Under the pieces are notes generated by a model. It saw only the letters and a list, made by a program, of their open reading frames with translations. It did no database searches and was not told the DNA's origin. Shown here piece by piece: positions 12,380 to 64,000 of a DNA stretch of 64,000 nucleotides. Numbering within the stretch: the first letter of the stretch is position 1; each line of letters starts with the position of its first letter. The translations under genes and the position numbers were made by a program. The DNA lies in the IMG/VR virus record IMGVR_UViG_3300027834_000005, positions 1 to 64,000 of that record. One strand, 5' to 3'.

Positions 12380-12769
12380 ATGGAAGTATTTAAACGTGTA
12401 GCAGATGATGGCGGATTTTATCATGTCAATGAAAAAGGTCAAGCTCATGGTTTATGTGTTACGACCCTTTCAGGTGGTCTCAGAAATGAGGTAAACTACG
12501 AGAATGATTTGAAGCATGGTGAATATAAATTGTTCTATGAAAATGGAAGTATATTCATGCATAGCATGTTTCGTGAAGATGTTGCTTTTGGAGAAATAAA
12601 ATCGTATGACGCTCAAGGTGTGTTAAATAAACATTGTATTATTAATAAAGATGATGTAGTATTGGACATAACTGATGAAACCCCTCTAACCGAAGAACTT
12701 AAGTTTTTACTTAGTATTCAAGGTTATATGTTCCTACCTGAAGATGGAGAACGACATGAACATGAATAG
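12380..12769 (+). CDS. EDxF-tag protein, MORN/YwqK-like repeat type
   Basis: G..G.Y..FYENG repeats; tag LTEELKFLLSIQG. Confidence 0.75.
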   Translation: MEVFKRVADDGGFYHVNEKGQAHGLCVTTLSGGLRNEVNYENDLKHGEYKLFYENGSIFMHSMFREDVAFGEIKSYDAQGVLNKHCIINKDDVVLDITDETPLTEELKFLLSIQGYMFLPEDGERHEHE

Positions 12770-13079
12770 TATTATCGTAGGTGATGAAGCCTTATTAAAG
12801 ACACAGTTGATTAGTCATACGCCTAATAGCGAAGGTTTCTTAGAAGCTAACATAGTTTCTAGAGACGGTAAGACGTTAGATGGCGAGGATAACGTATTGA
12901 AGTTCTTCGAAGAAGACATTTTTTATCGTACAGGCGACTTAGTCATCATGGAAAGTGTTGTTATTGCCGTTAATGGCGATGATGTAGATCTTAAGGTGTT
13001 ATCTACCTTTGGTCGTGATACCGTACGTGAATCAATGACCATAAATCAAGAATTCGTCAATGTAGACGGAAAATACTAG
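12744..13079 (+). CDS. Hypothetical protein
   Basis: ORF; start may be a few codons downstream. Confidence 0.65.
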   Translation: MENDMNMNSIIVGDEALLKTQLISHTPNSEGFLEANIVSRDGKTLDGEDNVLKFFEEDIFYRTGDLVIMESVVIAVNGDDVDLKVLSTFGRDTVRESMTINQEFVNVDGKY

Positions 13080-13086
13080 AAAGTAT

Positions 13087-13115
13087 TTGACAATGGTATT
13101 AATTAGTAGTATCAT
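13087..13115 (+). promoter_or_regulatory. sigma70-type promoter
   Basis: TTGACA-N17-TATCAT. Confidence 0.75.
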
Positions 13116-13157
13116 TGCATCACAAATTAAATAACTCACTCATAAAAGGAAAATCCT

Positions 13158-14372
13158 ATGGCTGCTAAATGTCCGACTCGACAGAAGTTAGTGAAGGCAC
13201 GTATCCAAATGTTAATGAATATGCCGTTCTTCGGTGTACTCGCAACGCATTTACAACTGAAAGAAATTGATGCCAAGTTCTGCCCTACGGCAGGTACTGA
13301 TGGTCGCTCTTTCTATTACAACAAGGACTTCATTGAAAGCCTTGATGATGAAGAGTGTAAATTCTTGTTTGCACATGAAGTTATGCATTGCTGCTATGAC
13401 CATATGGGTCGTCGTGGTCGTCGTGACGCGGACTTGTATAACCAAGCAGCTGATCACGTGATCAACTTGGAAATCACTGACCAGAACGTCGGTAAGCTTA
13501 TTAGCCGTCCAAACGACGATCCTGCTATGATCCCTTGCCATGATACTAAGTATCGCGGTATGTCATCTGATGAGGTCTATGAGATCTTATATGATGAACA
13601 AGAAAAGAACGGCGGCCAAGGCCAAGGTCATAGCTTCGATGTGCATTTCGATGCTGATAGCATGACTGATGAAGAAGCTGAAGAAGCAGGCATTGATAAA
13701 ATGACTGATGATGAGAAGAGCATGGTTCGTGATGCATTCCGTCAAGCGACTTTAGAAGCTGCTAAATCTGCCGGTGCTGAAAACGTGCCAAATGGCGTAC
13801 GTAGCATGATCGATGATCTTTTAGATCCACAAATGGATTGGCGTGAATGTTTGAATGCCAACATCCAAACGTTGGTTAAGAATGACTGGACTTACTCACG
13901 TCCTAACCGTCGTAATTCATCTCTTGGTGGCATCATCTTACCAGGTAATGACTTCGATGAAGCTGTGAGCGTTTGTTGCGCGATTGATACCTCTGGTTCG
14001 ATCTCTCATCAAATGATTCGTGAATTCTTGAGTGAAATCAAGGGTATCATGGAACAGTTCAAGCAGTTCGAAATCAAGATTTGGTGCTTCGACACGGATA
14101 CTTACACTATCTGGAATTACAACGAAGATAACGCCGATGATATGGATGAGTTCTTCCCAGAAGGCGGTGGTGGTACTGAGTTCATGGTGAACTGGGATCG
14201 CATGAAAGAAGAAGATATCGAGCCTGATCAATTCGTGATGTTCACGGATGGTTACCCTTACGGTAGCTGGGGTGAAGAAGAATATCAAGACAACATGGTT
14301 TTCTTGATCAGTGGTAACCCACGTCACGACATCGTTGCGCCGTTCGGCACTACTTTATATTACGACGACTAA
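13158..14372 (+). CDS. HEXXH metallopeptidase-like plus VWA domain protein (DUF2201-like)
   Basis: TAGTDG, FLFAHEVMH, acidic linker, MIDAS IDTSGS, GGGGT, MFTDG. Confidence 0.85.
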   Translation: MAAKCPTRQKLVKARIQMLMNMPFFGVLATHLQLKEIDAKFCPTAGTDGRSFYYNKDFIESLDDEECKFLFAHEVMHCCYDHMGRRGRRDADLYNQAADHVINLEITDQNVGKLISRPNDDPAMIPCHDTKYRGMSSDEVYEILYDEQEKNGGQGQGHSFDVHFDADSMTDEEAEEAGIDKMTDDEKSMVRDAFRQATLEAAKSAGAENVPNGVRSMIDDLLDPQMDWRECLNANIQTLVKNDWTYSRPNRRNSSLGGIILPGNDFDEAVSVCCAIDTSGSISHQMIREFLSEIKGIMEQFKQFEIKIWCFDTDTYTIWNYNEDNADDMDEFFPEGGGGTEFMVNWDRMKEEDIEPDQFVMFTDGYPYGSWGEEEYQDNMVFLISGNPRHDIVAPFGTTLYYDD

Positions 14373-14398
14373 CAGTCGAAAGTAGTAGACAACAACTC

Positions 14399-14432
14399 AA
14401 AAAAGGGATATCATTTAGATATCCCTTTTTTT
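14399..14432 (+). terminator. Intrinsic terminator
   Basis: AAAAAAGGGATATC-ATTTA-GATATCCCTTTTTTT. Confidence 0.9.
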
Positions 14433-15186: not shown

Positions 15187-15525
15187 ATGAATATTACGAC
15201 AGCAATACAAAATGCATTAGACGACGTGTTCGGTCATTTACCCGCAAAACTTGGTGAACCTCTAATCAAAGAAGTCCATGACATGGCTGATGTTTTTTCT
15301 TTAACAGAAGAAGAGATTCTTGAGCATATCCAGCTTAAGAGAAAAGACGTGCCTGCGCTGTATAGCGATGCGCCAGCTGAAGATTACGTGGAGCCTAAAG
15401 ACAGAGTTAATCATTCTGCTGACGTCATTGCCGATATTGAGAAGTTGCGTGGTGATGACGGTGAAGAAGGCGAAACAGATGAACTTGATGATATGTTCAA
15501 AGGTCTGTTAGGTGATGATAAGTAA
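15187..15525 (+). CDS. Acidic hypothetical protein
   Basis: AAGGA RBS. Confidence 0.75.
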   Translation: MNITTAIQNALDDVFGHLPAKLGEPLIKEVHDMADVFSLTEEEILEHIQLKRKDVPALYSDAPAEDYVEPKDRVNHSADVIADIEKLRGDDGEEGETDELDDMFKGLLGDDK

Positions 15526-16031
15526 TGACTATCGTCAGCTTGTCGTTATGGGAATCCTATGGTAGATTACCGTGGGATGCCATAACTTTCTGTACTGGTA
15601 ATAAGATTTCCACGTATAGCTTATATGGCGGTGAATTATTTGAGCACTATGAAACCTTCGAAAATGAAAAGTACATCCTTCATGTAAATAAATTGGCGTC
15701 TGGTTACGAGGTGCATCTCAAGGTAATCGGTACTGACACGACAAAATTAATTGTTAATCAGAGATACGATCATAATATGAGAATCGTGGCTAGTAACAAA
15801 ATTTTGGTTGAAGATCTAGCTATCATTAATACTATCAGATGTACATCTGACAAAGAACGAGAAGAGTCTGAAAAAGAACTTTTCGAACTGGCTCTGTCTG
15901 GTGTTACTGTGCCCCCTGAATACATTATAGAGAACGCTTTGGCGGATATCTATTACATGGACTCATGGACCAGATTTAAAGGATGGTTGACGTGTAAGTT
16001 CATAAACCCTATTAATAAGGTAGAACGTTAA
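15525..16031 (+). CDS. Hypothetical protein
   Basis: TAATG overlaps at both ends. Confidence 0.7.
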   Translation: MTIVSLSLWESYGRLPWDAITFCTGNKISTYSLYGGELFEHYETFENEKYILHVNKLASGYEVHLKVIGTDTTKLIVNQRYDHNMRIVASNKILVEDLAIINTIRCTSDKEREESEKELFELALSGVTVPPEYIIENALADIYYMDSWTRFKGWLTCKFINPINKVER

Positions 16032-16327
16032 TGGACGCTAGAATGGTAGCCAACGTAAAGGCTAAGAAAATATTTGAAGAGTTGGAAACTGGGACCAAGC
16101 TCATGGTATCCTGCATACGAGATAATAGACGAGTAGACAAATATGATATTGTGGAAGTGAGTGACGCTTCATACAACGATGATCTTATATGTATTAAACA
16201 GATAGAGGGCGTGTTCGATTATAGACCGTTTGTCGAAGACGAATACAATGAATTAAAAACTATACGTCTTGTGAGTCTGAAGGGTATGTCAGATGAAGAT
16301 ATATTTCTTCTAAGGTTGTCACTGTGA
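16031..16327 (+). CDS. EDxF-tag protein, array A
   Basis: GTKLMVSCI head; tag MSDEDIFLLRLSL. Confidence 0.8.
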   Translation: MDARMVANVKAKKIFEELETGTKLMVSCIRDNRRVDKYDIVEVSDASYNDDLICIKQIEGVFDYRPFVEDEYNELKTIRLVSLKGMSDEDIFLLRLSL

Positions 16328-16617
16328 TCAAAGTGATGAATCCTGAAGATTGTAAACGTTTGATATGCGTCCGTGCTCCTTATGCCATATACAGGGTCAA
16401 TGTTATCTATGACGTGGTAGATACAGGTCCTGCTAACGATGCCGATCATGATATCGAAATACGTATGCTTTCCGAAGACGGACTGACCTATACGTTTCAT
16501 GAAAGTGACATTGATCAGAGTGATGAATTCATGCATGATCGACCTAGTTTCTTCTTTTTCAAGGACATTACTGATATGTCAGATGAAGATGTATTCCATT
16601 TGAGATTATCCATATGA
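16324..16617 (+). CDS. EDxF-tag protein, array A
   Basis: Tag MSDEDVFHLRLSI. Confidence 0.8.
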   Translation: MIKVMNPEDCKRLICVRAPYAIYRVNVIYDVVDTGPANDADHDIEIRMLSEDGLTYTFHESDIDQSDEFMHDRPSFFFFKDITDMSDEDVFHLRLSI

Positions 16618-16901
16618 GTAATCTAGATCGCGTATTGTGCGTCCAAGCTGGATCTTCAGGAAGGTTCACTTTCAAGAAGACATATGATGTGGTAGACGTG
16701 CATGTGACACGCTCACGTCACGAAGTATTATTCCGTAAATTTACAATAATGAGTGATGATGACACCGCATCCGAATTCTATGATGACGAGGACCTTGATC
16801 AGTCACAAGAAGTAATAAGGCATTTTTCTAATTTCGATTATTTCATGAATATATCCGGTATGACTGATGAAGACATATTCCAACATATGCTGAGTAATTA
16901 A
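16614..16901 (+). CDS. EDxF-tag protein, array A
   Basis: VLCV..FTFKKTYDV; tag MTDEDIFQHMLSN. Confidence 0.8.
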   Translation: MSNLDRVLCVQAGSSGRFTFKKTYDVVDVHVTRSRHEVLFRKFTIMSDDDTASEFYDDEDLDQSQEVIRHFSNFDYFMNISGMTDEDIFQHMLSN

Positions 16902-16902
16902 T

Positions 16903-17172
16903 ATGACAGGTTACACGCCTAAAATCAACGACATTTTACGATGCCGATCAACCAATAGAGATGACAACGAAATCACAGTAGGTAAGTCATATAGAGTGAC
17001 TAAAGTTGAATATGGTGAGTTCTATTTTTCTTCCAATAAAGGAAGAACGATGAAGTATAATTCATGTTGCGTTAGTATTGGTTTTGATCTCATATATATG
17101 TTCAAGACTGAATTTGAGACCATAGATCATTTATCTGAAGAAGAGCAGTTTGAGATAAAGCTGAGCGTGTGA
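16903..17172 (+). CDS. EDxF-tag protein, array A
   Basis: DILRC..ITVGKSYRV; tag LSEEEQFEIKLSV. Confidence 0.8.
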   Translation: MTGYTPKINDILRCRSTNRDDNEITVGKSYRVTKVEYGEFYFSSNKGRTMKYNSCCVSIGFDLIYMFKTEFETIDHLSEEEQFEIKLSV

Positions 17173-17173
17173 T

Positions 17174-17458
17174 ATGGAAGTAGGATATAAACTATTATGT
17201 GTGAACTCTGGGAATGGTATATCGGGTGGTGAATTCACCAAGAATAGAGTTTATGATGTTAATATTGTTGACTTAACAAGCACACCCACGTTGTATAGCT
17301 TTAGAATTATTGATGATGATGGTCATTCTGTGAAATTTGATGACATAGACGTAAATCAGAGTGTAGAGGTGATAAGAAAATACCCTAAACTCACGTTCTT
17401 TATGGACGTCACTGACATGTCAGAAGAAGACTTATTTACCTTTATATTGAGTAACTAA
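17174..17458 (+). CDS. EDxF-tag protein, array A
   Basis: GYKLLCV..FTKNRVYDV; tag MSEEDLFTFILSN. Confidence 0.8.
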   Translation: MEVGYKLLCVNSGNGISGGEFTKNRVYDVNIVDLTSTPTLYSFRIIDDDGHSVKFDDIDVNQSVEVIRKYPKLTFFMDVTDMSEEDLFTFILSN

Positions 17459-17459
17459 T

Positions 17460-17759
17460 ATGGACATAACAAATATATCGATTGGCAGTATATTATTATG
17501 TATTAGAACCACTGCGCCTAGGTGGTTCTCTATCGACAAGACGTATGAAGTATCTACGTCACGTCCTACAAGCGGTTATAGTTTTGGATGCTTAGTAATA
17601 TATGATGACCAAGATGATGATTGGGATATAAAAAACTACGTCATCGAATTGGCAGGGTCCCCATCTGAAATAGCCACGTTTGGTGACGAAAAATGTATAT
17701 TCATAGATATTACGAATATGACTGAAGAAGAAATATTCCTTTTTCGTCTATCTTATTGA
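17460..17759 (+). CDS. EDxF-tag protein, array A
   Basis: GSILLCI..FSIDKTYEV; tag MTEEEIFLFRLSY. Confidence 0.8.
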   Translation: MDITNISIGSILLCIRTTAPRWFSIDKTYEVSTSRPTSGYSFGCLVIYDDQDDDWDIKNYVIELAGSPSEIATFGDEKCIFIDITNMTEEEIFLFRLSY

Positions 17760-17784
17760 CACTAAATTGAAAGGGTTGTATTAT
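17756..17784 (+). promoter_or_regulatory. sigma70-type promoter candidate
   Basis: TTGACA-N17-TATTAT; the -10 box overlaps ATG 17783, so it could only serve genes further downstream. Confidence 0.5.
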
Positions 17785-18088
17785 GTTAGAACATATCAAA
17801 GAAGGCGATAAAGTACTGTGCGTACAAGCTGATATTCTTAAGCACATAGACGCTAGATTTGAGGTTGGTAAATTGTATAACGTATGTTGTGTGCGATTTG
17901 CTCCCAGTGGGAAAATCATGGTTAGTTTACAAAGTCCTTGTGGTAATGTGTTGACTTATAAAGAGAAAGATTTCACGTATGAATTACACCACGAAGACCC
18001 TCAATGCTATTATAAGTTTGCCATGCCTGAAAACTTTAATCAGGAAGAATTATTTGAGTTTATGTTGAGAGGAGGAAACGATGAATAA
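17783..18088 (+). CDS. EDxF-tag protein, array A
   Basis: EGDKVLCV..FEVGKLYNV; tag FNQEELFEFMLRGG. Confidence 0.8.
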   Translation: MLEHIKEGDKVLCVQADILKHIDARFEVGKLYNVCCVRFAPSGKIMVSLQSPCGNVLTYKEKDFTYELHHEDPQCYYKFAMPENFNQEELFEFMLRGGNDE

Positions 18089-18359
18089 GGAATTATCCGT
18101 TGGAGACTTTATTATTTGTGACTGGGTAAGAGGTGGTACAACCATATATACCCTCAAGAAGCAGTATCAAATATTGTCTGTTTCAGATGGAGGATTCGAA
18201 CATACCTACATCGTTAGGAATAATGAAGAAACTCTCTTCGAAGTGTACAGCCAAGAAGTGGACGGCGGAAACAATGTGGCTGCGTATACAATGGCTACCT
18301 TCAGATCTGTTAAGAACATGACCAAAGAAGAATTATTTGAATTTATGTTGAGTCACTAG
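18081..18359 (+). CDS. EDxF-tag protein, array A
   Basis: VGDFIIC; tag MTKEELFEFMLSH. Confidence 0.8.
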   Translation: MNKELSVGDFIICDWVRGGTTIYTLKKQYQILSVSDGGFEHTYIVRNNEETLFEVYSQEVDGGNNVAAYTMATFRSVKNMTKEELFEFMLSH

Positions 18360-18361
18360 CC

Positions 18362-18646
18362 ATGAAAGTAAAAGATGCCAGAGAATCCATGTTTGAGTTG
18401 AAAAAAGGATCATTCGTTATGTGTTTGTATGCCGTTTCAAGCAACGTTCTAGAAACTGGCAAGGTATACAAAGTATTGAGAAGTCCTATATGTATTAAGC
18501 CTGCTATGGAAGTATATATTGATGTTGGTGGAATCCCATATTCTTTTTCCGAAAGAGCATTCACTGGTGACCTTGACTCTGTACACGTAATCAATATAGA
18601 CCACATGGATGATGAAGAGATATTCATGTTAAGGCTGTCAGTATGA
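18362..18646 (+). CDS. EDxF-tag protein, array A
   Basis: KGSFVMC..ETGKVYKV; tag MDDEEIFMLRLSV. Confidence 0.8.
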   Translation: MKVKDARESMFELKKGSFVMCLYAVSSNVLETGKVYKVLRSPICIKPAMEVYIDVGGIPYSFSERAFTGDLDSVHVINIDHMDDEEIFMLRLSV

Positions 18647-19742: not shown

Positions 19743-19968
19743 TGAAAAAGCAGACGAGTGTATTATTTCAGATTGTATCATCATGGTAATGAACGGTGAT
19801 GAAAAAGTGTCCAGAGTTCCTGCTGGTACGCCTTTTCCTGTTGGATGTGTTGTTAATTGGGAAGATCTTGGTGATAATCGTGAACGATTCACTATGAGAG
19901 ATGAGAACGACGTTGAAAGAACTATCGAAGTGATGTGTGAAGGTTTTATTGATGTCGTGTTTGCATGA
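19735..19968 (+). CDS. Hypothetical protein
   Basis: GGAG RBS; coupled. Confidence 0.65.
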   Translation: MISEKADECIISDCIIMVMNGDEKVSRVPAGTPFPVGCVVNWEDLGDNRERFTMRDENDVERTIEVMCEGFIDVVFA

Positions 19969-20279: not shown

Positions 20280-20288
20280 GAGGTAAGC

Positions 20289-54963: not shown

Positions 54964-54968
54964 TCATC

Positions 54969-56092: not shown

Positions 56093-56413
56093 ATGATAGA
56101 ACTTATTAGTGAAAACTCCGTATCGGAAACCAACAAGTACTTAATCTCCTATGACTCATGGGAAGCCGTAAATGGAGAGCACGTAACTCTATTGCCACGT
56201 ACTGAATTTCCAACTCTAATATTTGAATTTGACCAAGATAAGATCACTGCGCCTGCTGTGCACATAAAGGTTGCCCGTGGTGAGAGACCACTAATTAATC
56301 ATTCTGCTAAAGGTGAAAGGATCATACAGTTCATCAGGACCGATACTTTGTCGGATGAAGATAAGTTCTTCATTAAAATGTCCGGTGGCTATAATGAGAA
56401 GATAGACGTATGA
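56093..56413 (+). CDS. EDxF-tag protein, array C
   Basis: Tag LSDEDKFFIKMSG. Confidence 0.8.
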   Translation: MIELISENSVSETNKYLISYDSWEAVNGEHVTLLPRTEFPTLIFEFDQDKITAPAVHIKVARGERPLINHSAKGERIIQFIRTDTLSDEDKFFIKMSGGYNEKIDV

Positions 56414-56847
56414 ATTATAATCGCATACTCGTAGAAAATCTCTCATTGGGTGATAAGTTACTCTGTGTAAGAGATGACATAATAGAAAGTAGTACTTCCG
56501 GTGACTCTGCATGGACAGGTAAAGTCGTTACTGTCACCAGAATACATAACGTTAGATGGGGTGCCGGTGCCGGTGATTCAGATGTGGTACGCGATGTGCG
56601 GTTGACTTCAGACATTCTATATGACGATGTTGTCGTGGATGAGTTTCAAATGAACGGCGAGAAAAGATTCTATCGTGTACCTAATCAAGCTTACGGAGAC
56701 AAAATGGTATTCATAAACTATGAAGATATATCTGATATTGATAAATTTGACATAGCTTTATCTGGTAGTGATAGTGATGTGATCGGGCAGGCATATGAAT
56801 CTTGGTTAGAAGGTAACCCATACGCTAAAGACAGGACAAGTGACTAA
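56410..56847 (+). CDS. EDxF-tag protein, array C
   Basis: LGDKLLCV; tag ISDIDKFDIALSG. Confidence 0.8.
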   Translation: MNYNRILVENLSLGDKLLCVRDDIIESSTSGDSAWTGKVVTVTRIHNVRWGAGAGDSDVVRDVRLTSDILYDDVVVDEFQMNGEKRFYRVPNQAYGDKMVFINYEDISDIDKFDIALSGSDSDVIGQAYESWLEGNPYAKDRTSD

Positions 56848-57161
56848 TGATAGACGTAACAACCCCAGAAGATTTCATGGTAGATGGCAATCTATTCCGT
56901 TGTGTATACGCGGACGGCGCAGGCGAATGTTTACGTGACACTACGTTCATTGTTGAACGTCATGGATGTGAAGATTTTGAAGTGGATCTTAGAGGCTACC
57001 ATGATCGCGGAAGTCTAACAATGACTCACGAACAATCACTTGGCGGACAAGGCTATCAATATGCAGATGAGCCATGTAAGATCTATTTCGTAAAAAATGA
57101 TGTTATATTGTCTGAAGAAGACAAGTTTGAACTATCTCTTAAGCATGGGTGGACATGGTGA
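56847..57161 (+). CDS. EDxF-tag protein, array C
   Basis: Tag LSEEDKFELSLKHG. Confidence 0.8.
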   Translation: MIDVTTPEDFMVDGNLFRCVYADGAGECLRDTTFIVERHGCEDFEVDLRGYHDRGSLTMTHEQSLGGQGYQYADEPCKIYFVKNDVILSEEDKFELSLKHGWTW

Positions 57162-57478
57162 AATATTGCGAGAATTTAGATGACTTACGAGGAAGAAGAG
57201 TCGTGTGTACCTTATGCGAAGGTGCCAGAGGTGATGTTGGGTTATTAGGTAATCTTTTCTATGTTACTGCGAGTTGGTCTGGTGGAGAACGGGAACCTTT
57301 CCTCACCTTTAGATGCGTTAACAGCAGTAACATACTCACTATGTCTTTGCCTACCGCTACTGGAAATCTTCTCTATCACTATCACACGGAATCATTGACA
57401 ATGAGGTTCACTAAGCTCTGCGACATGACGGATGAAGATAATTTCGAAATTAAGTTGAAGGGTGGTAGAACATCATGA
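57149..57478 (+). CDS. EDxF-tag protein, array C
   Basis: Tag MTDEDNFEIKLKGG. Confidence 0.8.
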   Translation: MDMVKYCENLDDLRGRRVVCTLCEGARGDVGLLGNLFYVTASWSGGEREPFLTFRCVNSSNILTMSLPTATGNLLYHYHTESLTMRFTKLCDMTDEDNFEIKLKGGRTS

Positions 57479-57897
57479 CTATATCTCGCGTAGACGATAG
57501 AACAATGGTTAAGTTTGTAGACGAAAACGGTTTGCTACAGGGCTACGTATATCACTTCTCTAACGGTCACTGCACAGACAGACTACATTACATTGATAAT
57601 GTATGCGTGGGTTTACAACTTAAATGGTACACAGGCACTGATACCTTGTACATGGCATACATATATGCTAGAGGATGCATGACTGGCGAAGCTATCATGT
57701 TTAATAGAGACGGTTCCATACATTCCCATAATGTTTGGGATGATGATGATAACACCATATGCAATTTAGACGGTTTTCCATCCAAAGAAGATAAATTCGA
57801 ACTCACATTAAAACATGGTAACATAGATTGGTTACCAGAAAACACGCTAGATATTAAGCCGCCAAAAAACAGGACTGATATACATGGACCTCTTTGA
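57475..57897 (+). CDS. EDxF-tag protein, MORN/YwqK-like type
   Basis: GLLQG..MTGE..RDGS; tag PSKEDKFELTLKHG. Confidence 0.8.
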   Translation: MTISRVDDRTMVKFVDENGLLQGYVYHFSNGHCTDRLHYIDNVCVGLQLKWYTGTDTLYMAYIYARGCMTGEAIMFNRDGSIHSHNVWDDDDNTICNLDGFPSKEDKFELTLKHGNIDWLPENTLDIKPPKNRTDIHGPL

Positions 57898-58204
57898 TTC
57901 AAAAAACATACCGGAAGATCGTAGATACGTCATAGTTCAAGACGATTTATGTGACTTCATAGGTGATGTGTGGACTTTACATAAGGTTATTACTAGTGGT
58001 GATCGAGAATATTTCAGTTTCATCAGAGATACCCCAAATAAAGAAAAAACTAGGGAATTCGTAGAAGAGCATTTACGCGGTGAGACTTCTATAGGATTAG
58101 ACACGGACACTAGATTACAATTGGTGGCCGAGTCAAGTATATCCGATGAGGATAAGTTTTACATTGCTTTCAAAGGTTACAGCAAAATAGACGTTGACTC
58201 GTAA
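57884..58204 (+). CDS. EDxF-tag protein, array C
   Basis: Tag ISDEDKFYIAFKG. Confidence 0.8.
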   Translation: MDLFDSKNIPEDRRYVIVQDDLCDFIGDVWTLHKVITSGDREYFSFIRDTPNKEKTREFVEEHLRGETSIGLDTDTRLQLVAESSISDEDKFYIAFKGYSKIDVDS

Positions 58205-58222
58205 CCCCACATAGAGTATAAT
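58194..58222 (+). promoter_or_regulatory. sigma70-type promoter
   Basis: TTGACT-N17-TATAAT. Confidence 0.65.
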
Positions 58223-58225
58223 ACC

Positions 58226-58552
58226 ATGGTAAGAGAAGAATTGCTAGCCTATAAACGTGGCGATATTTTAGTAACTGTGCATGACACAGCTAAACGACGC
58301 TATGGAAGTCTTTACACCATTGAATATTGTTTCGAAGATGTGTTAACTGGTGAGTACATCTATTCATTAAGAAGTGAATCTGGTCACGTACTCAAACTTA
58401 AACATTCGTACATCAATGGCACTAAGGAACTAACAAGTTTTTCAAGTGCCAGAGGCATTCAGTTAGTGATTAAGAACGAACTTACTGAAGAAGAACAGTT
58501 CCTTGGTGAGCTTTGCGGATGGAATAGGGAGGCTATGGGCTTATGCGAGTAA
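58226..58552 (+). CDS. EDxF-tag protein, array C
   Basis: Tag LTEEEQFLGELCG. Confidence 0.8.
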   Translation: MVREELLAYKRGDILVTVHDTAKRRYGSLYTIEYCFEDVLTGEYIYSLRSESGHVLKLKHSYINGTKELTSFSSARGIQLVIKNELTEEEQFLGELCGWNREAMGLCE

Positions 58553-58884
58553 TGAATAAAGATGACCTTATCGTAGATAATAAATTCGTAGTTACCTTTC
58601 ACAAAAGAGGTAAGGCAGACGGCGAAGTGTGGATTTATAAACGTGCGCATTCACCTTGTAAAACTGACGAAGAAATCAAATATGTATTTAAACGATTCAC
58701 AGCCAATGGCGTCATCTTAGAAACTCATCGAATGACATTCAGAAGCTTTACTGGTGGCGATGAAATAGCTGTCAGAGATTTAGAGATAAGTCCCATAGAC
58801 ACCATTACCGATGAAGACATTTTCTTCATGAAGATGCAAGGTGTGAATACAAGCAGAGTGGAGCAATTCCGTGGAAAAGAATGA
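58543..58884 (+). CDS. EDxF-tag protein, array C
   Basis: Tag ITDEDIFFMKMQG. Confidence 0.8.
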   Translation: MRVMNKDDLIVDNKFVVTFHKRGKADGEVWIYKRAHSPCKTDEEIKYVFKRFTANGVILETHRMTFRSFTGGDEIAVRDLEISPIDTITDEDIFFMKMQGVNTSRVEQFRGKE

Positions 58885-59299
58885 TTTTAATTTAGACTAC
58901 GGGAACCTTTGTACTGTAGAAGGATTGCTTAAGGGTCATCAATATTTGATAATTAAAGATAGGAAAGACCTACATTCATCTATAGGTGAGTGTAGCGAGG
59001 GTCGTATTGTCGAATATAGTAGTGTTATAGACAGCCACGCAGGAGAGTATGAGTTTTCTATTGTAGGTGGTAATGATCATACCTACTCTACTGTACCGGA
59101 GATGAACGGACGTAAGCCGTGGTATATTGGAAGTGCCCGAAACTCTAGAAACTACGTGGTATATGTCCCTTTGCACTTAATACCTAAAGACGTATTGTTC
59201 CACTGTGCGTTATCCGGTGACTACACTGAACTATGTGAACAACTTTATTACGAATGGAGTATGTGGTGGGAAAAAGAAATAAAGCCAAAACGCGATTAA
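58871..59299 (+). CDS. EDxF-tag protein (divergent), array C
   Basis: Tag IPKDVLFHCALSG. Confidence 0.7.
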   Translation: MEKNDFNLDYGNLCTVEGLLKGHQYLIIKDRKDLHSSIGECSEGRIVEYSSVIDSHAGEYEFSIVGGNDHTYSTVPEMNGRKPWYIGSARNSRNYVVYVPLHLIPKDVLFHCALSGDYTELCEQLYYEWSMWWEKEIKPKRD

Positions 59300-59712
59300 C
59301 CAAGCATCGAAGAGGCGGATTAGAATGGACAGAAGATGACCTTGGTCGTAAACAAGGTGAGCTACTAAGATTCCATAACAGCATAACCATACTTAGAGAG
59401 CACTACGTAGATAACTTATTACATGGTATGACTACTAGGTGTGATTACTTTGGTAATCGAACGGCAACGACCACTTATGTCAATGGTGAGTTACATGGGA
59501 GAAAAACCATGTACATGAGAGACGGAAGAGTTAAGGCTGTGCGTCATTTTTATTTCGGTAAGCTACACGGTGAACTTGTAACATACATCGGCACGAATAT
59601 GGAACACGCTGTATATGATAATGGATTTAAAATACACGGTCTTCACATGCCTTTATCTGAAGAAGATAAGTTTGAATTGGCACTTAAGTATGAAGGATTA
59701 CAATGGGCATAA
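59254..59712 (+). CDS. EDxF-tag protein, MORN/YwqK-like type (start uncertain)
   Basis: Repeated LHG motifs; tag LSEEDKFELALKYEG. Confidence 0.8.
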   Translation: MEYVVGKRNKAKTRLTKHRRGGLEWTEDDLGRKQGELLRFHNSITILREHYVDNLLHGMTTRCDYFGNRTATTTYVNGELHGRKTMYMRDGRVKAVRHFYFGKLHGELVTYIGTNMEHAVYDNGFKIHGLHMPLSEEDKFELALKYEGLQWA

Positions 59713-59999
59713 GACCAGAGCTACTACAATATAGAGACGGAGATGAGCTACTTTGTGTGCGTAGTAATGACAAAGATTTTGATGTCAGTGACACCTACGT
59801 GGTGTCGGGAGGATACCTCAATGATTCACTCGATAGAGTATTTACTATCGTCACGGACTACACTACGTGGCGAATAGTAGAAAACTACTTGAACGGCACT
59901 AATATCATGAAGGATGATACTAGTGTGTTGATGGTGAGAAAGGATTTACTCACTGAAGAAGATAAATTTCATGGAGAACTTTCAGGATGGAAAGTATAA
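59703..59999 (+). CDS. EDxF-tag protein, array C
   Basis: DGDELLCV; tag LTEEDKFHGELSG. Confidence 0.8.
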   Translation: MGIRPELLQYRDGDELLCVRSNDKDFDVSDTYVVSGGYLNDSLDRVFTIVTDYTTWRIVENYLNGTNIMKDDTSVLMVRKDLLTEEDKFHGELSGWKV

Positions 60000-60418
60000 A
60001 TTTCGAAGAACTAAGATCACATAACCTATCAGAATCTAAAGTTGGTGATAAATTCCTATGTGTGTTCCACAAGGGTAAATGGTACAGTCACGACCAATTA
60101 GAAAGTAACGTAGTAACTTTCAAAGAGGTGAAGCTTTACGAGTACATGAAGAAAGGCAAAAAAGTAAGTGTGGTTGAGAGAATGACGTTAGAAATTAATG
60201 GCAGAGACCATCATATGTATAGCGACACTCAGTTAGTAGTGACTGCCGGTGATAAGAGAAGAGGCGACTATGCACGTAACGATTACGTCACAGCGTTCAT
60301 TCCACTGGAACAGCTTACCCAAGAAGCACTATTTGAATCAACTCTATGCGGTGACTATAAAGAGATGTCTAAGCAGTTGAGATCGGAGTTTATAAAATGG
60401 AAAAAGACAGCAAATTAG
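59987..60418 (+). CDS. EDxF-tag protein, array C
   Basis: VGDKFLCV; tag LTQEALFESTLCG. Confidence 0.75.
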   Translation: MESINFEELRSHNLSESKVGDKFLCVFHKGKWYSHDQLESNVVTFKEVKLYEYMKKGKKVSVVERMTLEINGRDHHMYSDTQLVVTAGDKRRGDYARNDYVTAFIPLEQLTQEALFESTLCGDYKEMSKQLRSEFIKWKKTAN

Positions 60419-60798
60419 ATTACTATAAGAATCTTCCTTACGGGCGTTTAGTGACTGATGATGATTTATACATCGGAAACAAATTCCTAGTGTACCGAGA
60501 CAATGAACATGACACATGCCGTAGAGGACACGTTATCATACTTGATGGACTGATAGACTTCGACGGAGACTACACGTTCGAAATGTGTGAAACTCCTGAC
60601 GACATGTCCGTGATGTTCATAAGTAAGGATGAGGCAAACGGCAACGGTGACACGTACGGAGAAAATGTTCTGCTTGTTCCAATGGACCTAATACTTGAAG
60701 AAGATAAGTTCATTGGTGTATTATCCGGTGACTGGGAATATATATGTGACGTGATGGACAAGGCAAAAGAAAACCATAAGAAGAAATTAAAAGGGTAG
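60397..60798 (+). CDS. EDxF-tag protein, array C
   Basis: Tag ILEEDKFIGVLSG. Confidence 0.8.
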   Translation: MEKDSKLDYYKNLPYGRLVTDDDLYIGNKFLVYRDNEHDTCRRGHVIILDGLIDFDGDYTFEMCETPDDMSVMFISKDEANGNGDTYGENVLLVPMDLILEEDKFIGVLSGDWEYICDVMDKAKENHKKKLKG

Positions 60799-60801
60799 TA
60801 G

Positions 60802-61131
60802 ATGAATATTTTCAAGGATGTTGAAGACATACGCAATTTAAGAAAAACTAGGTTCTCCACCCTTGAGTCGGGCGATGAAGTGTTATGTGTGAATGGACTA
60901 GACATAGGTAGCATCCTCACGATTGAGAAGCACACCCACAATACATTCATCAGAATGCCTAATAACAAATTGATTGCCGTCAACTACGCTACCCTATGCA
61001 CTGATTACTTCGCTCATATACCAACAAAGTACTTATGCGGCGAAGAAACGTTCTACGCTACCTTATCAAACGACTGGTCAGGCTCTGCTAATAGAATATT
61101 TAATGAATATATGAAGGTGGTTTTAACATGA
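60802..61131 (+). CDS. EDxF-tag protein, array C
   Basis: SGDEVLCV; tag LCGEETFYATLSN. Confidence 0.75.
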   Translation: MNIFKDVEDIRNLRKTRFSTLESGDEVLCVNGLDIGSILTIEKHTHNTFIRMPNNKLIAVNYATLCTDYFAHIPTKYLCGEETFYATLSNDWSGSANRIFNEYMKVVLT

Positions 61132-61436
61132 TAGTGTACCCTACTAAAGATAACATAGAACTAAAAACGCGACTAGTTTGTGTAAAAGATTCAGGTAATG
61201 AATACATGAATAACAGAGCTTCCATATCTAGTATGCCAGATTTCGTATACGAAGAAGCGTATGGTATCATATTCGATGATGCTTGGGCCGAAGGTAAGGT
61301 TAGCTTAGAGTGTATGAGTGGAAAAGCTCTTCCTAATGGGAGAGAGATGCTTTTCGCCCTAGAAGAATTCTTAGACGACGAAGATCTATTTTACCTGTCA
61401 CTTGAAAATGGCGTGTCTTTGGGTAAACCCATATAG
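61128..61436 (+). CDS. EDxF-tag protein, array C
   Basis: Tag LDDEDLFYLSLEN. Confidence 0.8.
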   Translation: MIVYPTKDNIELKTRLVCVKDSGNEYMNNRASISSMPDFVYEEAYGIIFDDAWAEGKVSLECMSGKALPNGREMLFALEEFLDDEDLFYLSLENGVSLGKPI

Positions 61437-61440
61437 CCCA

Positions 61441-61469
61441 TTGACAATATCACTAAGAACGAGTATAGT
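61441..61469 (+). promoter_or_regulatory. sigma70-type promoter
   Basis: TTGACA-N17-TATAGT. Confidence 0.7.
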
Positions 61470-61492
61470 GTTCTCTTTTGGAGTCATAACAT

Positions 61493-61831
61493 ATGTACGT
61501 ACTTGAGAAAGACCTATACAAAGGCAATCGATTTTTGTGCATCCAAGACACTATGTATGATTTTAAAAATCTAATTATAGAGGTGAACGAAATCCATATT
61601 GAGTACGGTACAAGATCAATACTACTTGACCACCCTAAGTACCCAATGCCTATAGCCATTACATACGAAGGTATGAAAAGTAGACATTATTACAATACTT
61701 TAGTACTCGTGCCAATAGACAAGTTAGTACTACCAGAAAAAATGGAGTTCGAAGCTTTACTAACTAACGATTGGGAAGAAGTGACTTCCTACGTTATCTC
61801 CAACGTTCACACTTGCATAAAGGACTTTTAA
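61493..61831 (+). CDS. EDxF-tag protein (divergent), array C
   Basis: KGNRFLCI; tag LPEKMEFEALLTN. Confidence 0.7.
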   Translation: MYVLEKDLYKGNRFLCIQDTMYDFKNLIIEVNEIHIEYGTRSILLDHPKYPMPIAITYEGMKSRHYYNTLVLVPIDKLVLPEKMEFEALLTNDWEEVTSYVISNVHTCIKDF

Positions 61832-61834
61832 CAT

Positions 61835-62290
61835 ATGCTTACTCTCGTTGAAGAAGCCCTTTGTGAAATGTACATAGACGAAGACGGTAGACGTCAAGGT
61901 GCGACTACGCATTTCTATGACTTCGGTGAAAAAAAAGCCATACACAAGATCATGGAATTTAAAGACGACGTTGTTAATGGCGCGTACATGTTGTTCAGGA
62001 TTGATGGCTCCATTAAATTCAACCATAGCTACGTTAATGGGTTCAAATGCGGGGAACAAACAACATGGAGAAGTAACGGCGTAATCTTCAGAAGTGAAAT
62101 GTGCTCTTCAATCTCTGTGTTGCATGGCGAAGCAGTTGAAAGAGATAGAAACGGGTACGTAAATAGCCACTGCATATATGCTAATGGCGTGGTAGTTGAA
62201 CGCCTTGACGATAGCGAACTCACCGACGAAGATAAGTTTGAGCTTAGGCTTAAGTACGGAGACATTGGTTTCCTAAAGCACTTCAAGTAG
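61835..62290 (+). CDS. EDxF-tag protein, MORN/YwqK-like type
   Basis: GRRQG..VNG..LHGE; tag LTDEDKFELRLKYG. Confidence 0.8.
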   Translation: MLTLVEEALCEMYIDEDGRRQGATTHFYDFGEKKAIHKIMEFKDDVVNGAYMLFRIDGSIKFNHSYVNGFKCGEQTTWRSNGVIFRSEMCSSISVLHGEAVERDRNGYVNSHCIYANGVVVERLDDSELTDEDKFELRLKYGDIGFLKHFK

Positions 62291-62298
62291 GAACGTAT

Positions 62299-62619
62299 AT
62301 GAGACAAGTTGATCGTGATGACATAGTTACAGGTACGAAGTTCTTATTGGTAGCTAAGCACACTAATGATATTGTCATTGGCGAGGTAATTTCAAAGTCT
62401 AGAAGTAATTTTTACTACAAGATTGGAAACGGTAGAGTTTACGTGTTGGGTTTCACCACTACGGAGGTTTTGCCTGTGCCCGATTTGAGGGTCATACCAT
62501 TAGACTATATGGATTGGTATGTGGAACAGGGCGAAATCAGAGACCAAGACGTTTTCCTCGCTAAGTTAAGTGGTGACTGGAACGACGTAGTAGATAAGAT
62601 AACAGGAAGAAATCTATGA
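62299..62619 (+). CDS. EDxF-tag protein, array C
   Basis: Tag IRDQDVFLAKLSG. Confidence 0.75.
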   Translation: MRQVDRDDIVTGTKFLLVAKHTNDIVIGEVISKSRSNFYYKIGNGRVYVLGFTTTEVLPVPDLRVIPLDYMDWYVEQGEIRDQDVFLAKLSGDWNDVVDKITGRNL

Positions 62620-63002
62620 CCATGCGTATTGTTACTTCTAGGGACCTAATCAATGAAGGAATGGAGCTTCTCCTTTTTTCATTCACTGATAAGGAGAAGC
62701 ACTCACACGGCATATTCGTAGAGAAGTCTGTATCTATGTGGACTGAAGGCCCAGAGTATATAATAGATATCACCAGAAAAGACGGTAACACTACAAAGTT
62801 TGGTGCTAAGAAACATGTATTAATGGGTGTCGTACCTTACTCAGAAAAAGATGGCATCAAGAAGTTCTTGGTTGCTATACCAGTTTCAAGTTTAGATGAG
62901 AACGACCTGTTTCTGTTAAAACTAAGTAATAATGCTGATCATATAAGAGCTAAGACAAAAAAGCTTATCAACTCATATTCAATTGAACACTGGGTAGACT
63001 AA
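62616..63002 (+). CDS. EDxF-tag protein, array C
   Basis: Tag LDENDLFLLKLSN. Confidence 0.8.
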   Translation: MTMRIVTSRDLINEGMELLLFSFTDKEKHSHGIFVEKSVSMWTEGPEYIIDITRKDGNTTKFGAKKHVLMGVVPYSEKDGIKKFLVAIPVSSLDENDLFLLKLSNNADHIRAKTKKLINSYSIEHWVD

Positions 63003-63433
63003 TGTCGGAATTAAAACGCATAGTAGAAAGAAGTGGCGGAATCATAGAAACGTTCCAAGTTGATGAAACTGGCTCGAAACAGGGAGTCAGTGTTAGGACG
63101 TTCGAGAACGGAAAGCCATGGCTTATATCTTATTACCAAAATGGGTTCTTACATGGCGAATTCATAGAGCTGCACGAAGATGGGTACATACGTGAGCACT
63201 CTATGTACTCTAATGGTAAACAGTGCGGCGAGATGGTATTAAAAAGAGATGACAGGGTAGTACGCCATGAAATATGGTATAGTGCAGAATTGGTCCATAC
63301 ATTCATGTATCTTGGATCTATTTTCTGTGAACCAACAGAAGAAACCAAGTTTGAAATGACACTTAAATACGGCACCAAGTGGTTACCCAAGAGGACATAT
63401 GAAGAGTTATCAGCTGAATTTGAACAGTCCTAA
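63002..63433 (+). CDS. EDxF-tag protein, MORN/YwqK-like type
   Basis: GSKQG..LHGE..CGE; tag PTEETKFEMTLKYG. Confidence 0.8.
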   Translation: MSELKRIVERSGGIIETFQVDETGSKQGVSVRTFENGKPWLISYYQNGFLHGEFIELHEDGYIREHSMYSNGKQCGEMVLKRDDRVVRHEIWYSAELVHTFMYLGSIFCEPTEETKFEMTLKYGTKWLPKRTYEELSAEFEQS

Positions 63434-63722
63434 TTATAGAACTATAAATAAAAAAACATTAGTTCAAGATCTACCTCATAACACAATGCTTATCGGCATA
63501 GATAAGCATAATAGTGGGGATGCGATACACATACAGATTGGCGAAGATGGACGTCATATGTGTAACGGTTCGGTATGCTCTAACCTGCATCTTGATAATG
63601 ATAGATACGCATATGTACCTGAATCTAGCCTAAGTGAAGAAGCCGTGTTCGAAGCTAAGTTGCGTGGTGATTGGAGTGAAGTGGCAATTGAAGCTGCTTC
63701 ACTATACTACCGTGTCTATTAA
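63399..63722 (+). CDS. EDxF-tag protein, array C
   Basis: Tag LSEEAVFEAKLRG; AGGA RBS. Confidence 0.7.
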   Translation: MKSYQLNLNSPNYRTINKKTLVQDLPHNTMLIGIDKHNSGDAIHIQIGEDGRHMCNGSVCSNLHLDNDRYAYVPESSLSEEAVFEAKLRGDWSEVAIEAASLYYRVY

Positions 63723-63729
63723 TCCGTAT

Positions 63730-64000
63730 ATGAATCTTCCATTCGACCATCTCATATTCACTACGGATATGGAAGTGGGGAAGGAAATATTAGTGTACCG
63801 TCATGATGATCACGCTGGTGACAGGTATTCTTTTAAGGCTAATATATTCAGAGTACATGATGAATGTGATAGTGATGGTGATTATGATATGCAGCGCATG
63901 ATTGCCTCCCCAGATAACGTGATGGATCAGAAATTCAGCTTTGTTAGACTAGATGAATATAATGGCAACAAACTATGGATGGATTGCATTACGTTATTAG
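63730..64000 (+). CDS. Partial ORF running off the window; probably a further array C member
   Basis: MNLPFDHLIFTTDMEVGKEILVY head resembles the family; tag would lie beyond the window. Confidence 0.55.
   Translation, partial: MNLPFDHLIFTTDMEVGKEILVYRHDDHAGDRYSFKANIFRVHDECDSDGDYDMQRMIASPDNVMDQKFSFVRLDEYNGNKLWMDCITLL

What the first reader, a model, noticed from the sequence alone, without database searches (positions are those of the whole stretch)
12380..64000. About 80 divergent small proteins share one C-terminal 'EDxF' tag: a possible modular effector or adaptor library
By manual count, 80 ORFs carry [LMI]-[ST]-[DE]-E-[DE]-x-F-x-hydrophobic-x-L-[SG]-G at or near the C-terminus: 1 at 12.4 kb, 9 at 16.0-18.6 kb, 4 at 20.0-22.3 kb, 2 at 25.9-26.6 kb, 24 at 30.1-38.2 kb and 40 at 48.6-63.7 kb. 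Examples: MSDEDIFLLRLS, LSEEDKFLFDVGG, LTDEDKFELRLKYG. The heads upstream are barely alignable. The tag looks like a capped amphipathic helix (S/T-x-x-E cap, F and L on one face, acidic N-end). A constant tail on variable heads is the layout of adaptor families such as poxvirus ankyrin/F-box proteins. Inference: the tail docks all of these proteins onto one hub (phage or host protein, or self-oligomer) while the heads diversify against many targets such as host defence proteins. I do not recognise a named family for it.
Basis: partly seen in the sequence, partly recalled or inferred. Interest (0 to 1): 0.95.

Follow-up and report, generated by a model that had tools for sequence, protein, structure and literature searches.

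The report
Huge-phage small-protein family, shared tail helix
An uncultured 347-kb phage carries more than 100 tandem genes for small acidic proteins that all end in the same short capped helix; most are diverged copies of one undescribed barrel-plus-helix family rather than unrelated heads with a tag, although the helix also sits on a second fold.

Summary
A motif profile scores 57 genes at 10 bits or more, against 0 in 50 shuffles.

- With the tail removed, profile searches link 50 of 81 heads into one family.
- AlphaFold2 models this head as an SH3-like five-stranded barrel, with the tag as a confident C-terminal helix (pLDDT 91).
- Eight members have an unrelated MORN-repeat head with the same helix (pLDDT 94).
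- 23 heads remain unclassified.
- Barrel domains in tandem-repeat proteins elsewhere lack the helix. A few unrelated window proteins, including two small membrane proteins, end in a similar motif. So the helix is a semi-portable module.

The arrays run past the window to at least 76 kb, giving about 110 or more copies. They are punctuated by consensus sigma-70 promoters, which suggests early expression.

Relatives occur only in uncultured metagenomic phages, again in arrays. There is no Pfam, PHROG, solved-structure or cultured-phage match.

Function is unknown. My best reading is a diversifying early accessory repertoire with a conserved capping helix. A hub-docking role is not excluded.

The parts
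12380..12769 (+). Isolated MORN-head member (129 aa), tail LTEELKFLLSIQG
   Evidence: Pfam MORN_2 at 25.2 bits, below the 29.6 cut-off. Belongs to the MORN head cluster. Tag found at residues 103-115.
15525..16031 (+). 168-aa member with an internal tag (SEKELFELALSG); head unclassified
   Evidence: Tag profile 10.8 bits. The head matches neither the barrel nor the MORN profile.
16031..18646 (+). Array A: 9 consecutive barrel-type genes (89-101 aa); the tag ends the protein (e.g. MSDEDIFLLRLSL-stop)
   Evidence: Heads are linked to arrays B and C by a tail-less profile.
19965..21111 (+). Three members (104, 138 and 160 aa): two barrel-type, one unclassified
22012..22332 (+). Barrel-type member (106 aa) with a degenerate tail, EDEAMKFLITLSM
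25850..26648 (+). Pair of paralogues (127 and 133 aa) with a 'F-E-x-x-L-[TK]-[HY]-G' tail followed by about 30 more residues; head unclassified
   Evidence: The pair is linked by BLAST. Tags scored. Head scores are marginal.
30064..38233 (+). Array B: 24 members (84-115 aa), tail typically L-[ST]-[DE]-E-E-K-F-x-[FY]-x-[IL]-G-G-[IL]-[ED]-[AS]-L. Non-members interspersed: 32211-32621, 34332-34457, 36460-36918 (macro domain), 37469-37654.
   Evidence: AF2 model of 31338-31655: pLDDT 91.2, five strands plus helix 88-102. Macro domain.
48611..63722 (+). Array C: 40 members (95-230 aa). Barrel-type genes (tail ...F-x-x-x-L-S-G-[DN]-[WYF]...) are interleaved with MORN-type genes.
51282..51581 (+). 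MORN-head member. The other MORN-head members in array C are 53715-54056, 54380-54673, 57475-57897, 59254-59712, 61835-62290 and 63002-63433. Tail: [ST]-[DE]-E-D-K-F-E-h-x-L-K-[YH]-G-x-x-x-[WF]-L.
   Evidence: MORN cluster. AF2 model of 54380-54670: pLDDT 93.8, seven strands plus helix 80-90. The family profile hits the SET7/9 MORN region at E=1.3e-5.
63634..64000 (+). Family member cut by the window end; the array continues to at least about 76 kb of the contig
   Evidence: Its head hits the barrel profile. L072 and L030 show about 30 further members beyond 64 kb.
29733..29761 (+). Perfect sigma-70 consensus promoter (TTGACA-17-TATAAT), just after a terminator-like hairpin (29695-29718) and upstream of array B. 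Similar sites with at most 1 mismatch: 12218, 17756, 31836, 33730, 48895, 51231, 58194, 61441.
   Evidence: 22 sites on the + strand against 1 on the - strand; shuffles average 1.6.
7224..7592 (+). Non-family 122-aa protein ending in a tag-like ...VSFLIKLSGD.... Similar tails occur on 1823-2557, 14446-15117, 25187-25558 and 46138-46485 (the last two are small multi-TM proteins).
   Evidence: Strict F...L[SG]G: 5 matches in 70 non-member proteins against 0.27 expected. Sequences. The orthologue in L076 keeps the motif.
22975..24966 (+). Soluble FtsH-like AAA+/M41 protease lying between the arrays. This is context and only a speculative hub candidate.
   Evidence: Pfam AAA, ClpB_D2-small and Peptidase_M41. 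At least 1024 metagenomic homologues. Its distribution is much wider than the tag family.

Best explanation
The tag is the C-terminal alpha-helix, together with the strand before it, of an undescribed and massively amplified family of small (about 85-150 aa), acidic phage proteins. The genes sit in tightly packed tandem arrays in an uncultured 347-kb phage.

Shown:
- Most members are diverged paralogues of one protein: an SH3-like five-stranded barrel followed, after a 5-residue link, by a self-capped helix (hydrophobic staple L, S/T N-cap, acidic first turn, F-x-h-x-L packing face, Gly C-cap).
- A second, interleaved set has MORN-repeat heads with the same helix.
- The same architecture and the same arrays occur in a few related uncultured phages.

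Inferred:
- The arrays grew by tandem duplication and rapid divergence of the heads, which act as variable binding surfaces. The helix stayed constant because it caps and stabilises a small beta-only domain, and may also provide a shared contact surface.
- Recombination between neighbouring genes moved the helix onto MORN heads.
- Near-consensus sigma-70 promoters through the arrays suggest transcription by host RNA polymerase early in infection. The most likely role is therefore an early host-takeover or anti-defence repertoire, with each copy binding a different target.

The biochemical function itself is not shown.
For: - Motif enrichment: 57 genes against 0 in shuffles.
- Tail-less head profile links 50 of 81 members across all arrays. 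The only non-member hit is the truncated last gene, and shuffles give 0-1 hits.
- AF2, barrel type: pLDDT 91.2, pTM 0.81, helix 88-102.
- AF2, MORN type: pLDDT 93.8, pTM 0.82, helix 80-90.
- Barrel and MORN heads are unrelated (hhalign probability 0.07%).
- A tag profile trained only on barrel members finds the correct site in all 8 MORN members, 4 of them at E<0.02.
- A profile search of 1.84 billion representative proteins gives 244 hits. About 35 or more are external ~100-aa proteins with the same barrel-plus-tag layout.
- External arrays: L073, L074, L075, L076 and L078.
- In external members position -3 varies, while the N-cap, N3, F, L and G positions are kept. That is the pattern expected of a structural helix.
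- 4-nt gene overlaps dominate, and members have median pI 4.9 against 5.8 for other genes.
- The only DNA repeats are the tag-coding segments at 60-85% identity, so the duplications are old.
- 22 sigma-70-like promoters on the + strand against 1 on the - strand.
Against: - A purely structural helix does not easily explain why the same motif is kept on two unrelated folds, or why tag-like tails end two small membrane proteins and other unrelated proteins.
- Tandem-barrel proteins elsewhere do without the helix, so the barrel does not need it to fold.
- 23 of 81 heads could not be assigned to either fold.
- I could not inspect model coordinates, so packing of F and L against the head is inferred from confidence scores only.
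- There is no expression data, and the host is unknown.
Confidence: 0.6

Rival explanations
1. The helix is a portable docking module that brings 100 or more different heads to one hub. The hub could be a phage protein such as the soluble FtsH-like AAA+ protease between the arrays, or a conserved host machine. The family would then be an adaptor library comparable to poxvirus ANK/PRANC proteins or SspB-type protease adaptors.
For: - Same tail on at least two unrelated folds.
- Tag-like tails on two multi-TM proteins and on a conserved 122-aa protein whose orthologue keeps the motif.
- The barrel exists without the tail in tandem-repeat proteins.
- The three acidic residues before F are more conserved in this genome than a capping box requires.
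- The FtsH-like gene lies among the arrays, and a relative (L076) has a MORN-plus-tail array just downstream of it.
Against: - Most heads are one family, so the constant tail is largely inherited.
- The helix is rigidly linked and confidently folded rather than on a flexible linker.
- FtsH-like homologues are far more widespread (at least 1024) than the tag family. L077 and L079 show no tags within 10 kb.
- No partner was tested.
Confidence: 0.2
2. The helix is a self-association element. Members form homo- or hetero-oligomers through the shared helix, giving combinatorial assemblies.
For: A short amphipathic helix with a wide hydrophobic face (positions -1, 0, +2, +4) is conserved across paralogues that are co-expressed from the same operons.
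Against: Monomer models are already confident and compact (pTM 0.81-0.82).
Confidence: 0.12
3. The motif is a virion-packaging or protease-processing signal, like the T4 internal-protein capsid targeting sequence with its L-x-E cleavage site. It would load a library of proteins into the capsid for injection.
For: The motif contains L-[ST]-E, which resembles L-x-E prohead-protease sites (my own knowledge of T4). Large phages are known to carry paralogous ejection proteins.
Against: The motif is C-terminal or internal and folded, not an N-terminal propeptide. The arrays lie among replication-type genes and carry sigma-70-type promoters typical of early genes. No structural genes are nearby.
Confidence: 0.04
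4. The conservation is at the nucleotide level (a recombination or regulatory site), or it is a compositional artefact of acidic proteins.
For: DNA repeat families coincide with the tag-coding segments.
Against: Synonymous codons vary freely at conserved residues. The distance to the next start codon varies from about 20 to over 200 nt. Shuffled and reversed proteomes give no hits. External homologues with different codons keep the peptide motif.
Confidence: 0.02

Closest known systems
Poxvirus ankyrin/PRANC (F-box-like) host-range proteins and other multigene expansions in large DNA viruses (ankyrin, MORN, BTB)
   Same: Many paralogues in one large viral genome; a variable N-terminal binding part and a constant C-terminal element; tandem clustering; presumed host-interaction role.
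   Different: The tail here is a 13-19-residue single helix, not a ~50-residue F-box-like domain, and there is no PRANC or F-box Pfam match. Most heads are one small barrel domain rather than repeat arrays. The host is bacterial and no hub is known.
Chromo-barrel / Tudor / CarD-RID type SH3-like barrels
   Same: A five-stranded SH3-like barrel with a 3-10 turn before the last strand. Chromo-barrels also carry a C-terminal helix. These are the best Foldseek neighbours: UHRF1 tandem Tudor domain, MSL3, MRG15, CarD.
   Different: The matches are weak (E of 0.1 or worse, TM 0.36-0.45) and there is no sequence similarity. An aromatic cage was not examined. This is fold-level resemblance only.
MORN-repeat proteins (Pfam MORN_2 PF07661; SET7/9 N-terminal domain; PfMORN1)
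   Same: Eight window members, and more beyond the window, have MORN-type beta-hairpin repeats.
   Different: They are very short (2-5 repeats). They end in the family helix, which is not a described part of MORN proteins. The Pfam score is below the curated cut-off.
SspB-type adaptors of AAA+ proteases
   Same: A small beta-rich substrate-binding head plus a short conserved C-terminal element. This is a conceptual analogue for the hub model, and the phage encodes an FtsH-like protease.
   Different: SspB uses a long flexible linker and an unstructured docking peptide. Here the link is 5 residues and the element is a folded helix. There is no sequence similarity, and binding was not tested.
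Small uncharacterised SH3-like phage proteins and tandem-barrel proteins (some fused to PF18909 dGTP_diPhyd_N, or annotated cytidine deaminase)
   Same: The barrel part is homologous at profile level, E down to 6.5e-17. BFVD neighbours are small uncharacterised phage proteins.
   Different: None of the roughly 75 multi-barrel proteins carries the tag helix.

Membership tests
Any curated protein family (Pfam-A, PHROGs v4) | Profile match at or above the curated or significant threshold | tested here: not met
   10 representatives: no Pfam family except a sub-threshold MORN_2 match and a chance DUF7625 match. PHROG hits are all E>0.007. Precomputed Pfam is '-' for all array genes.
MORN repeat proteins (PF07661 MORN_2) | Repeat profile match above the Pfam gathering score | tested here: not met
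   12380-12769 scores 25.2 bits against a 29.6 cut-off. Only 'faint' precomputed hits appear in relatives.
MORN repeat proteins (fold level) | Consecutive beta-hairpin repeats forming a single-layer sheet, with homology to a solved MORN domain | tested here: met
   The A4 profile hits the SET7/9 MORN region at E=1.3e-5. The AF2 model has seven consecutive strands, pLDDT 93.8. Foldseek lists SET7/9 and PfMORN1 among weak hits. This applies to 8 of the 81 members only.
SH3-like barrel (Tudor / chromo-barrel) | Five-stranded barrel topology | tested here: met
   AF2 model of 31338-31655: strands 17-20, 33-41, 52-56, 67-70 and 80-82, with a short helix at 71-77.
SH3-like barrel (Tudor / chromo-barrel) | Significant structural or sequence match to a solved member | tested here: not met
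   Best Foldseek PDB hit E=0.1, TM 0.38. Best BFVD hit E=0.0097. The profile against PDB gives only YqfB/ASCH at E=0.04.
Poxvirus ANK/PRANC adaptors | C-terminal PRANC/F-box-like domain and ankyrin-repeat head | tested here: not met
   No such Pfam hits. The tail is 13-19 residues. Heads are barrel or MORN.
Poxvirus ANK/PRANC or SspB-type adaptors (functional class) | The tail binds a common hub (Skp1/cullin, or an unfoldase N-domain) | not testable with these tools
   No complex prediction or binding assay was available. Co-occurrence with the FtsH-like gene is inconclusive.
SspB-type adaptors | A flexible linker between the head and an unstructured docking peptide | tested here: not met
   The link is 5 residues with a conserved L and a preceding F-V-P strand. 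The helix has pLDDT of about 94.
T4-type capsid-targeted internal proteins | N-terminal targeting propeptide and late expression with structural genes | tested here: not met
   The motif is C-terminal. The arrays carry sigma-70 consensus promoters and sit among replication and repair genes. Virion content was not testable.

The most novel reading that the evidence does not exclude
The helix is a portable recruitment module. It would let one huge phage plug more than 100 early proteins, of at least two folds plus small membrane proteins, into a single hub such as its soluble FtsH-like protease or a conserved host machine. That would be a bacterial-virus counterpart of the poxvirus ANK/PRANC adaptor libraries, used for example to deliver many host defence proteins for degradation or sequestration.
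Probability: 0.15. Interest if true: 0.9.

Novelty: new variant of a known kind. Interest (0 to 1): 0.6.

Why it matters
About 110 or more copies occupy roughly 30 kb, close to a tenth of a 347-kb phage genome. To my knowledge that is among the largest paralogue expansions seen in a phage.

The family has no annotation in Pfam or PHROGs, no solved structure and no cultured-phage relative.

It gives a concrete case for studying how huge phages use their extra coding capacity. It also provides two confidently modelled scaffolds (barrel plus helix, MORN plus helix) for testing whether phages build diversified binder repertoires, as large eukaryotic viruses do.

If the shared helix proves to be a docking element, it would define a new recruitment motif and a route to its hub.

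Tried and rejected
- Megablast of array B, and tblastn of a barrel member, a MORN member and the FtsH-like protein, against 50,697 phage records: no match. Only the NAD-dependent ligase hit, at 38% or less, to Stenotrophomonas CM1, XacN1 and Atu_ph07.
- The search for related loci with family alignments A1 and A3 failed because no stretch was conserved enough. With the ligase it returned only the source contig.
- A degenerate DNA scan of IMG/VR for the tag found true hits only in the source contig. The other ~60 loci are chance matches in one unrelated prophage protein (IFREEDKFRIYFNG), because my WSN codon also admitted Arg.
- The word-indexed protein search with external members returned only the query members, on 1-5 kb contigs with no names. 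Cluster look-up gave one name only, a 'cytidine deaminase' label on a two-barrel Enterococcus phage protein.
- Foldseek against PDB and BFVD found no significant match for either model.
- Four literature searches and two huge-phage preprints gave no description of the family.
- L071 and L072 are identical to the window, so there is no population variation for a selection test. Paralogues are too diverged for dN/dS.
- tRNA and Rfam scans of the window found nothing.
- The ORF-poor stretch at 11.2-12.4 kb is simply a minus-strand gene.
- Co-occurrence of the family with the FtsH-like gene is inconclusive. It is present near the gene in L076 and L078, and absent within 10 kb in L077 and L079.

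Full report
**Source.** The window is the first 64 kb of IMGVR_UViG_3300027834_000005 (347,232 bp). The same sequence is held as NCBI GCA_902730825.1, CACVGT010000001.1. It is an uncultured huge phage.
- Recognisable genes include a DNA polymerase B fragment, a 5'-3' exonuclease, a sigma-like protein, MoxR-type AAA and DUF2201/VWA proteins, a soluble FtsH-like AAA+/M41 protease, thioredoxin, RtcB and an NAD-dependent ligase.
- The ligase is at most 38% identical to those of Stenotrophomonas CM1, XacN1 and Atu_ph07.
- There is no nucleotide-level match in 50,697 phage records.
- All genes but one are on the + strand.

**Observation.** The motif is real and very far from chance.
- The strict regex [ST][DE]E[DE].F occurs 39 times in + frames and never in - frames. 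Residue shuffles of the 151 tiled genes average 0.21.
- An iterated 13-column profile (consensus LTEEDKFELKLSG) scores 57 genes at 10 bits or more, against 0 in 50 shuffles and 0 in reversed sequences.
- The conserved block is longer than reported: [FLY]-[VI]-P-x-[DS]-x-L-[ST]-[DE]-E-[DE]-x-F-x-h-x-L-[SG]-G. F is present in 79 of 81, L(+4) in 62, and E(-3) in 65.
- Leu uses all six codons, and Ser/Thr use TCN, AGY and ACN, so selection acts on the peptide.
- DNA repeats in the region are only the tag-coding segments, at 60-85% identity.

**Heads.** Profile iteration tells a different story.
- Tail-less heads alone link 25, then 36, then (with external homologues added) 50 of the 81 members, across all three arrays.
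- No true non-member is hit. The single 'negative' is the gene truncated by the window end. Shuffles give 0-1 hits.
- The head consensus begins h-G-x-x-h-h-C-h ... G-x-x-Y-x-V.
- AlphaFold2 with the family alignment models 31338-31655 at pLDDT 91.2 and pTM 0.81. It shows five strands with a short helical turn before the last one (an SH3-like barrel), then helix 88-102. That helix is the tag.
- Foldseek finds only weak Tudor, chromo-barrel and CarD-like neighbours in PDB (E of 0.1 or worse), and small uncharacterised phage proteins in BFVD.

**Second head type.** Eight window members form a separate cluster with MORN-type repeats.
- Their profile hits the MORN region of SET7/9 at E=1.3e-5.
- AF2 models 54380-54670 at pLDDT 93.8: seven consecutive strands, then helix 80-90, again the tag.
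- Barrel and MORN head profiles show no similarity (hhalign probability 0.07%).
- A tag profile trained only on barrel members locates the correct C-terminal site in all eight MORN members.
- MORN-type tails have their own flavour: K-F-E-h-x-L-K-[YH]-G-x-x-x-[WF]-L.
- Twenty-three heads remain unassigned. Some score marginally as barrels. Several are longer proteins of 160-230 aa.

**Is the helix separable from the barrel?**
- A profile search of 1.84 billion representative proteins gave 244 hits at E of 1e-3 or better.
- About 35 or more are ~100-aa proteins from other metagenomes with the same barrel-plus-tag layout, for example ...LTDKELFLFRLSGRLPE.
- About 75 are proteins with 2-8 tandem barrels and no tag at all. 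Some are fused to PF18909.
- So the barrel folds without the helix when it is flanked by other domains. The helix accompanies stand-alone small proteins.
- In external members position -3 is variable, while the S/T N-cap, the acidic N3, F, h, L and G persist. That is the signature of a hydrophobic staple, a capping box, a packing face and a Gly C-cap, which reads as a structural helix. The triple-acidic version is specific to this genome.
- Against a purely structural reading: strict F...L[SG]G tails occur 5 times in the 70 non-member proteins, against 0.27 expected. These include two small multi-TM proteins (25187-25558, 46138-46485) and a conserved 122-aa protein whose orthologue in a marine relative keeps the motif.

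**Extent and relatives.**
- The array continues beyond the window to at least about 76 kb, with roughly 30 more members of both head types. The genome therefore holds about 110 or more.
- Other metagenomic contigs show the same organisation. L074 and L075 carry consecutive barrel-plus-tag genes. L073 mixes barrel-plus-tag and MORN-plus-tag genes with a third small family ending ND-x-E-x-L-x-[FY]-Y-x-L-K-Y-[SA].
- L076, a Tara Oceans relative whose FtsH-like protein is 54% identical, has a MORN-plus-tail array directly downstream of that gene. L078 (60% identical) has three members at syntenic positions.
- None of these proteins has a name or a Pfam hit.

**Expression context.**
- Genes are packed with 4-nt overlaps, and members are acidic (median pI 4.9 against 5.8 for other genes).
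- Near-consensus sigma-70 promoters (at most 1 mismatch, spacer 17-18) number 22 on the + strand against 1 on the - strand, with 1.6 expected from shuffles. Several sit immediately upstream of array genes, and one follows a strong terminator-like hairpin just before array B.
- This suggests transcription by host RNA polymerase, meaning early genes. That is an inference, not a measurement.

**Interpretation.**
- Most of the 'constant tail on variable heads' pattern is explained by tandem duplication and fast divergence of one small barrel-plus-helix protein. The helix is the slowest-evolving part because it is a self-capped structural element.
- The helix is nevertheless semi-portable. It occurs on MORN heads, is missing from multi-barrel proteins, and has look-alikes on unrelated proteins. 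A shared functional role such as docking or oligomerisation therefore remains possible.
- I could not test binding. The only nearby hub candidate, the FtsH-like protease, is far more widely distributed (at least 1024 homologues) than the tag family, and its co-occurrence with the family is inconclusive.
- I rate the structural-paralogue reading at 0.6, hub docking at about 0.2, self-association at about 0.12, and packaging-signal or DNA-level explanations as unlikely.

**Novelty.** The family is undescribed in every library and paper I could search. Its scale is unusual for a phage. The general phenomenon, a lineage-specific multigene expansion with a conserved terminal element in a large virus, is already known. 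I therefore rate it as a new variant of a known kind, with interest 0.6.

Noticed in passing
window, + strand: 1066, 7973, 8337, 9727, 9817, 12218, 13087, 17756, 19255, 22975, 27967, 29733, 31836, 33730, 38223, 39932, 44131, 46877, 48895, 51231, 58194, 61441: There are 22 near-consensus sigma-70 promoters (TTGACA, 17-18 nt spacer, TATAAT, at most 1 mismatch) on the + strand, against 1 on the - strand and about 1.6 expected. The whole region looks transcribed by host RNA polymerase.
   Followed up: partly
window 36460-36918 (+): A macro-domain protein (Pfam Macro, E=1.3e-6) is embedded in array B. It may be an ADP-ribose-related counter-defence or repair gene.
   Followed up: no
window 22975-24966 (+): A soluble FtsH-like protein (AAA+, ClpB_D2-small, M41 peptidase) with no evident N-terminal membrane anchor. 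It has at least 1024 metagenomic homologues, many on 0.3-0.45 Mb contigs, but none in cultured-phage records.
   Followed up: partly
window 11249-12190 (-): The only minus-strand gene (313 aa). It has three ~68-aa repeats (H-G-D-F ... G-x-G-C-x-K-C) and a C-terminal segment that, from my own knowledge, resembles Vsr/DUF559-type endonucleases, so it is probably a homing endonuclease. It explains the local skew change and the apparent ORF-poor gap.
   Followed up: partly
window 25187-25558 and 46138-46485 (+): Two small multi-TM proteins end in similar cytoplasmic tails...RFFNKLSGEV... and ...LFIEKLGGEVC. These resemble the hydrophobic half of the tag.
   Followed up: partly
L073 62-4250 (ENA ERZ23498405 scaffold_40701): In another phage contig, about 10 small genes (77-100 aa) of a third family end in ND-x-E-x-L-x-[FY]-Y-x-L-K-Y-[SA]. 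They are interleaved with barrel-plus-tag and MORN-plus-tag genes, and the tail resembles the MORN-type L-K-Y-G ending.
   Followed up: no
external proteins P0001, P0011 (and P0025): Proteins with 2-8 tandem copies of the same barrel domain and no tag. P0001 and P0011 are fused to PF18909 (dATP/dGTP diphosphohydrolase N-terminal domain). P0025 is labelled cytidine deaminase in Enterococcus phage vB_EfaS_SZ1. This hints at a nucleotide-metabolism link for the barrel.
   Followed up: no
window 9900-11183 and 13158-14372 (+): A MoxR-type AAA ATPase and a DUF2201 metallopeptidase/VWA protein form a pair, split by the minus-strand endonuclease gene and one MORN-tag gene. The pair is syntenic in relative L076.
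   Followed up: no
window 38744-39376 and 39386-39988 (+): Adjacent paralogous genes (210 and 200 aa) with no family match. Their starts are 81% identical over 62 nt.
   Followed up: no
window 31186-31223 and 33365-33402: A 38-nt stretch is 95% identical between two array-B genes that are otherwise about 35% identical. It encodes the acidic D-D-D-R-D-D-T-D-P-W loop and suggests local gene conversion.
   Followed up: no
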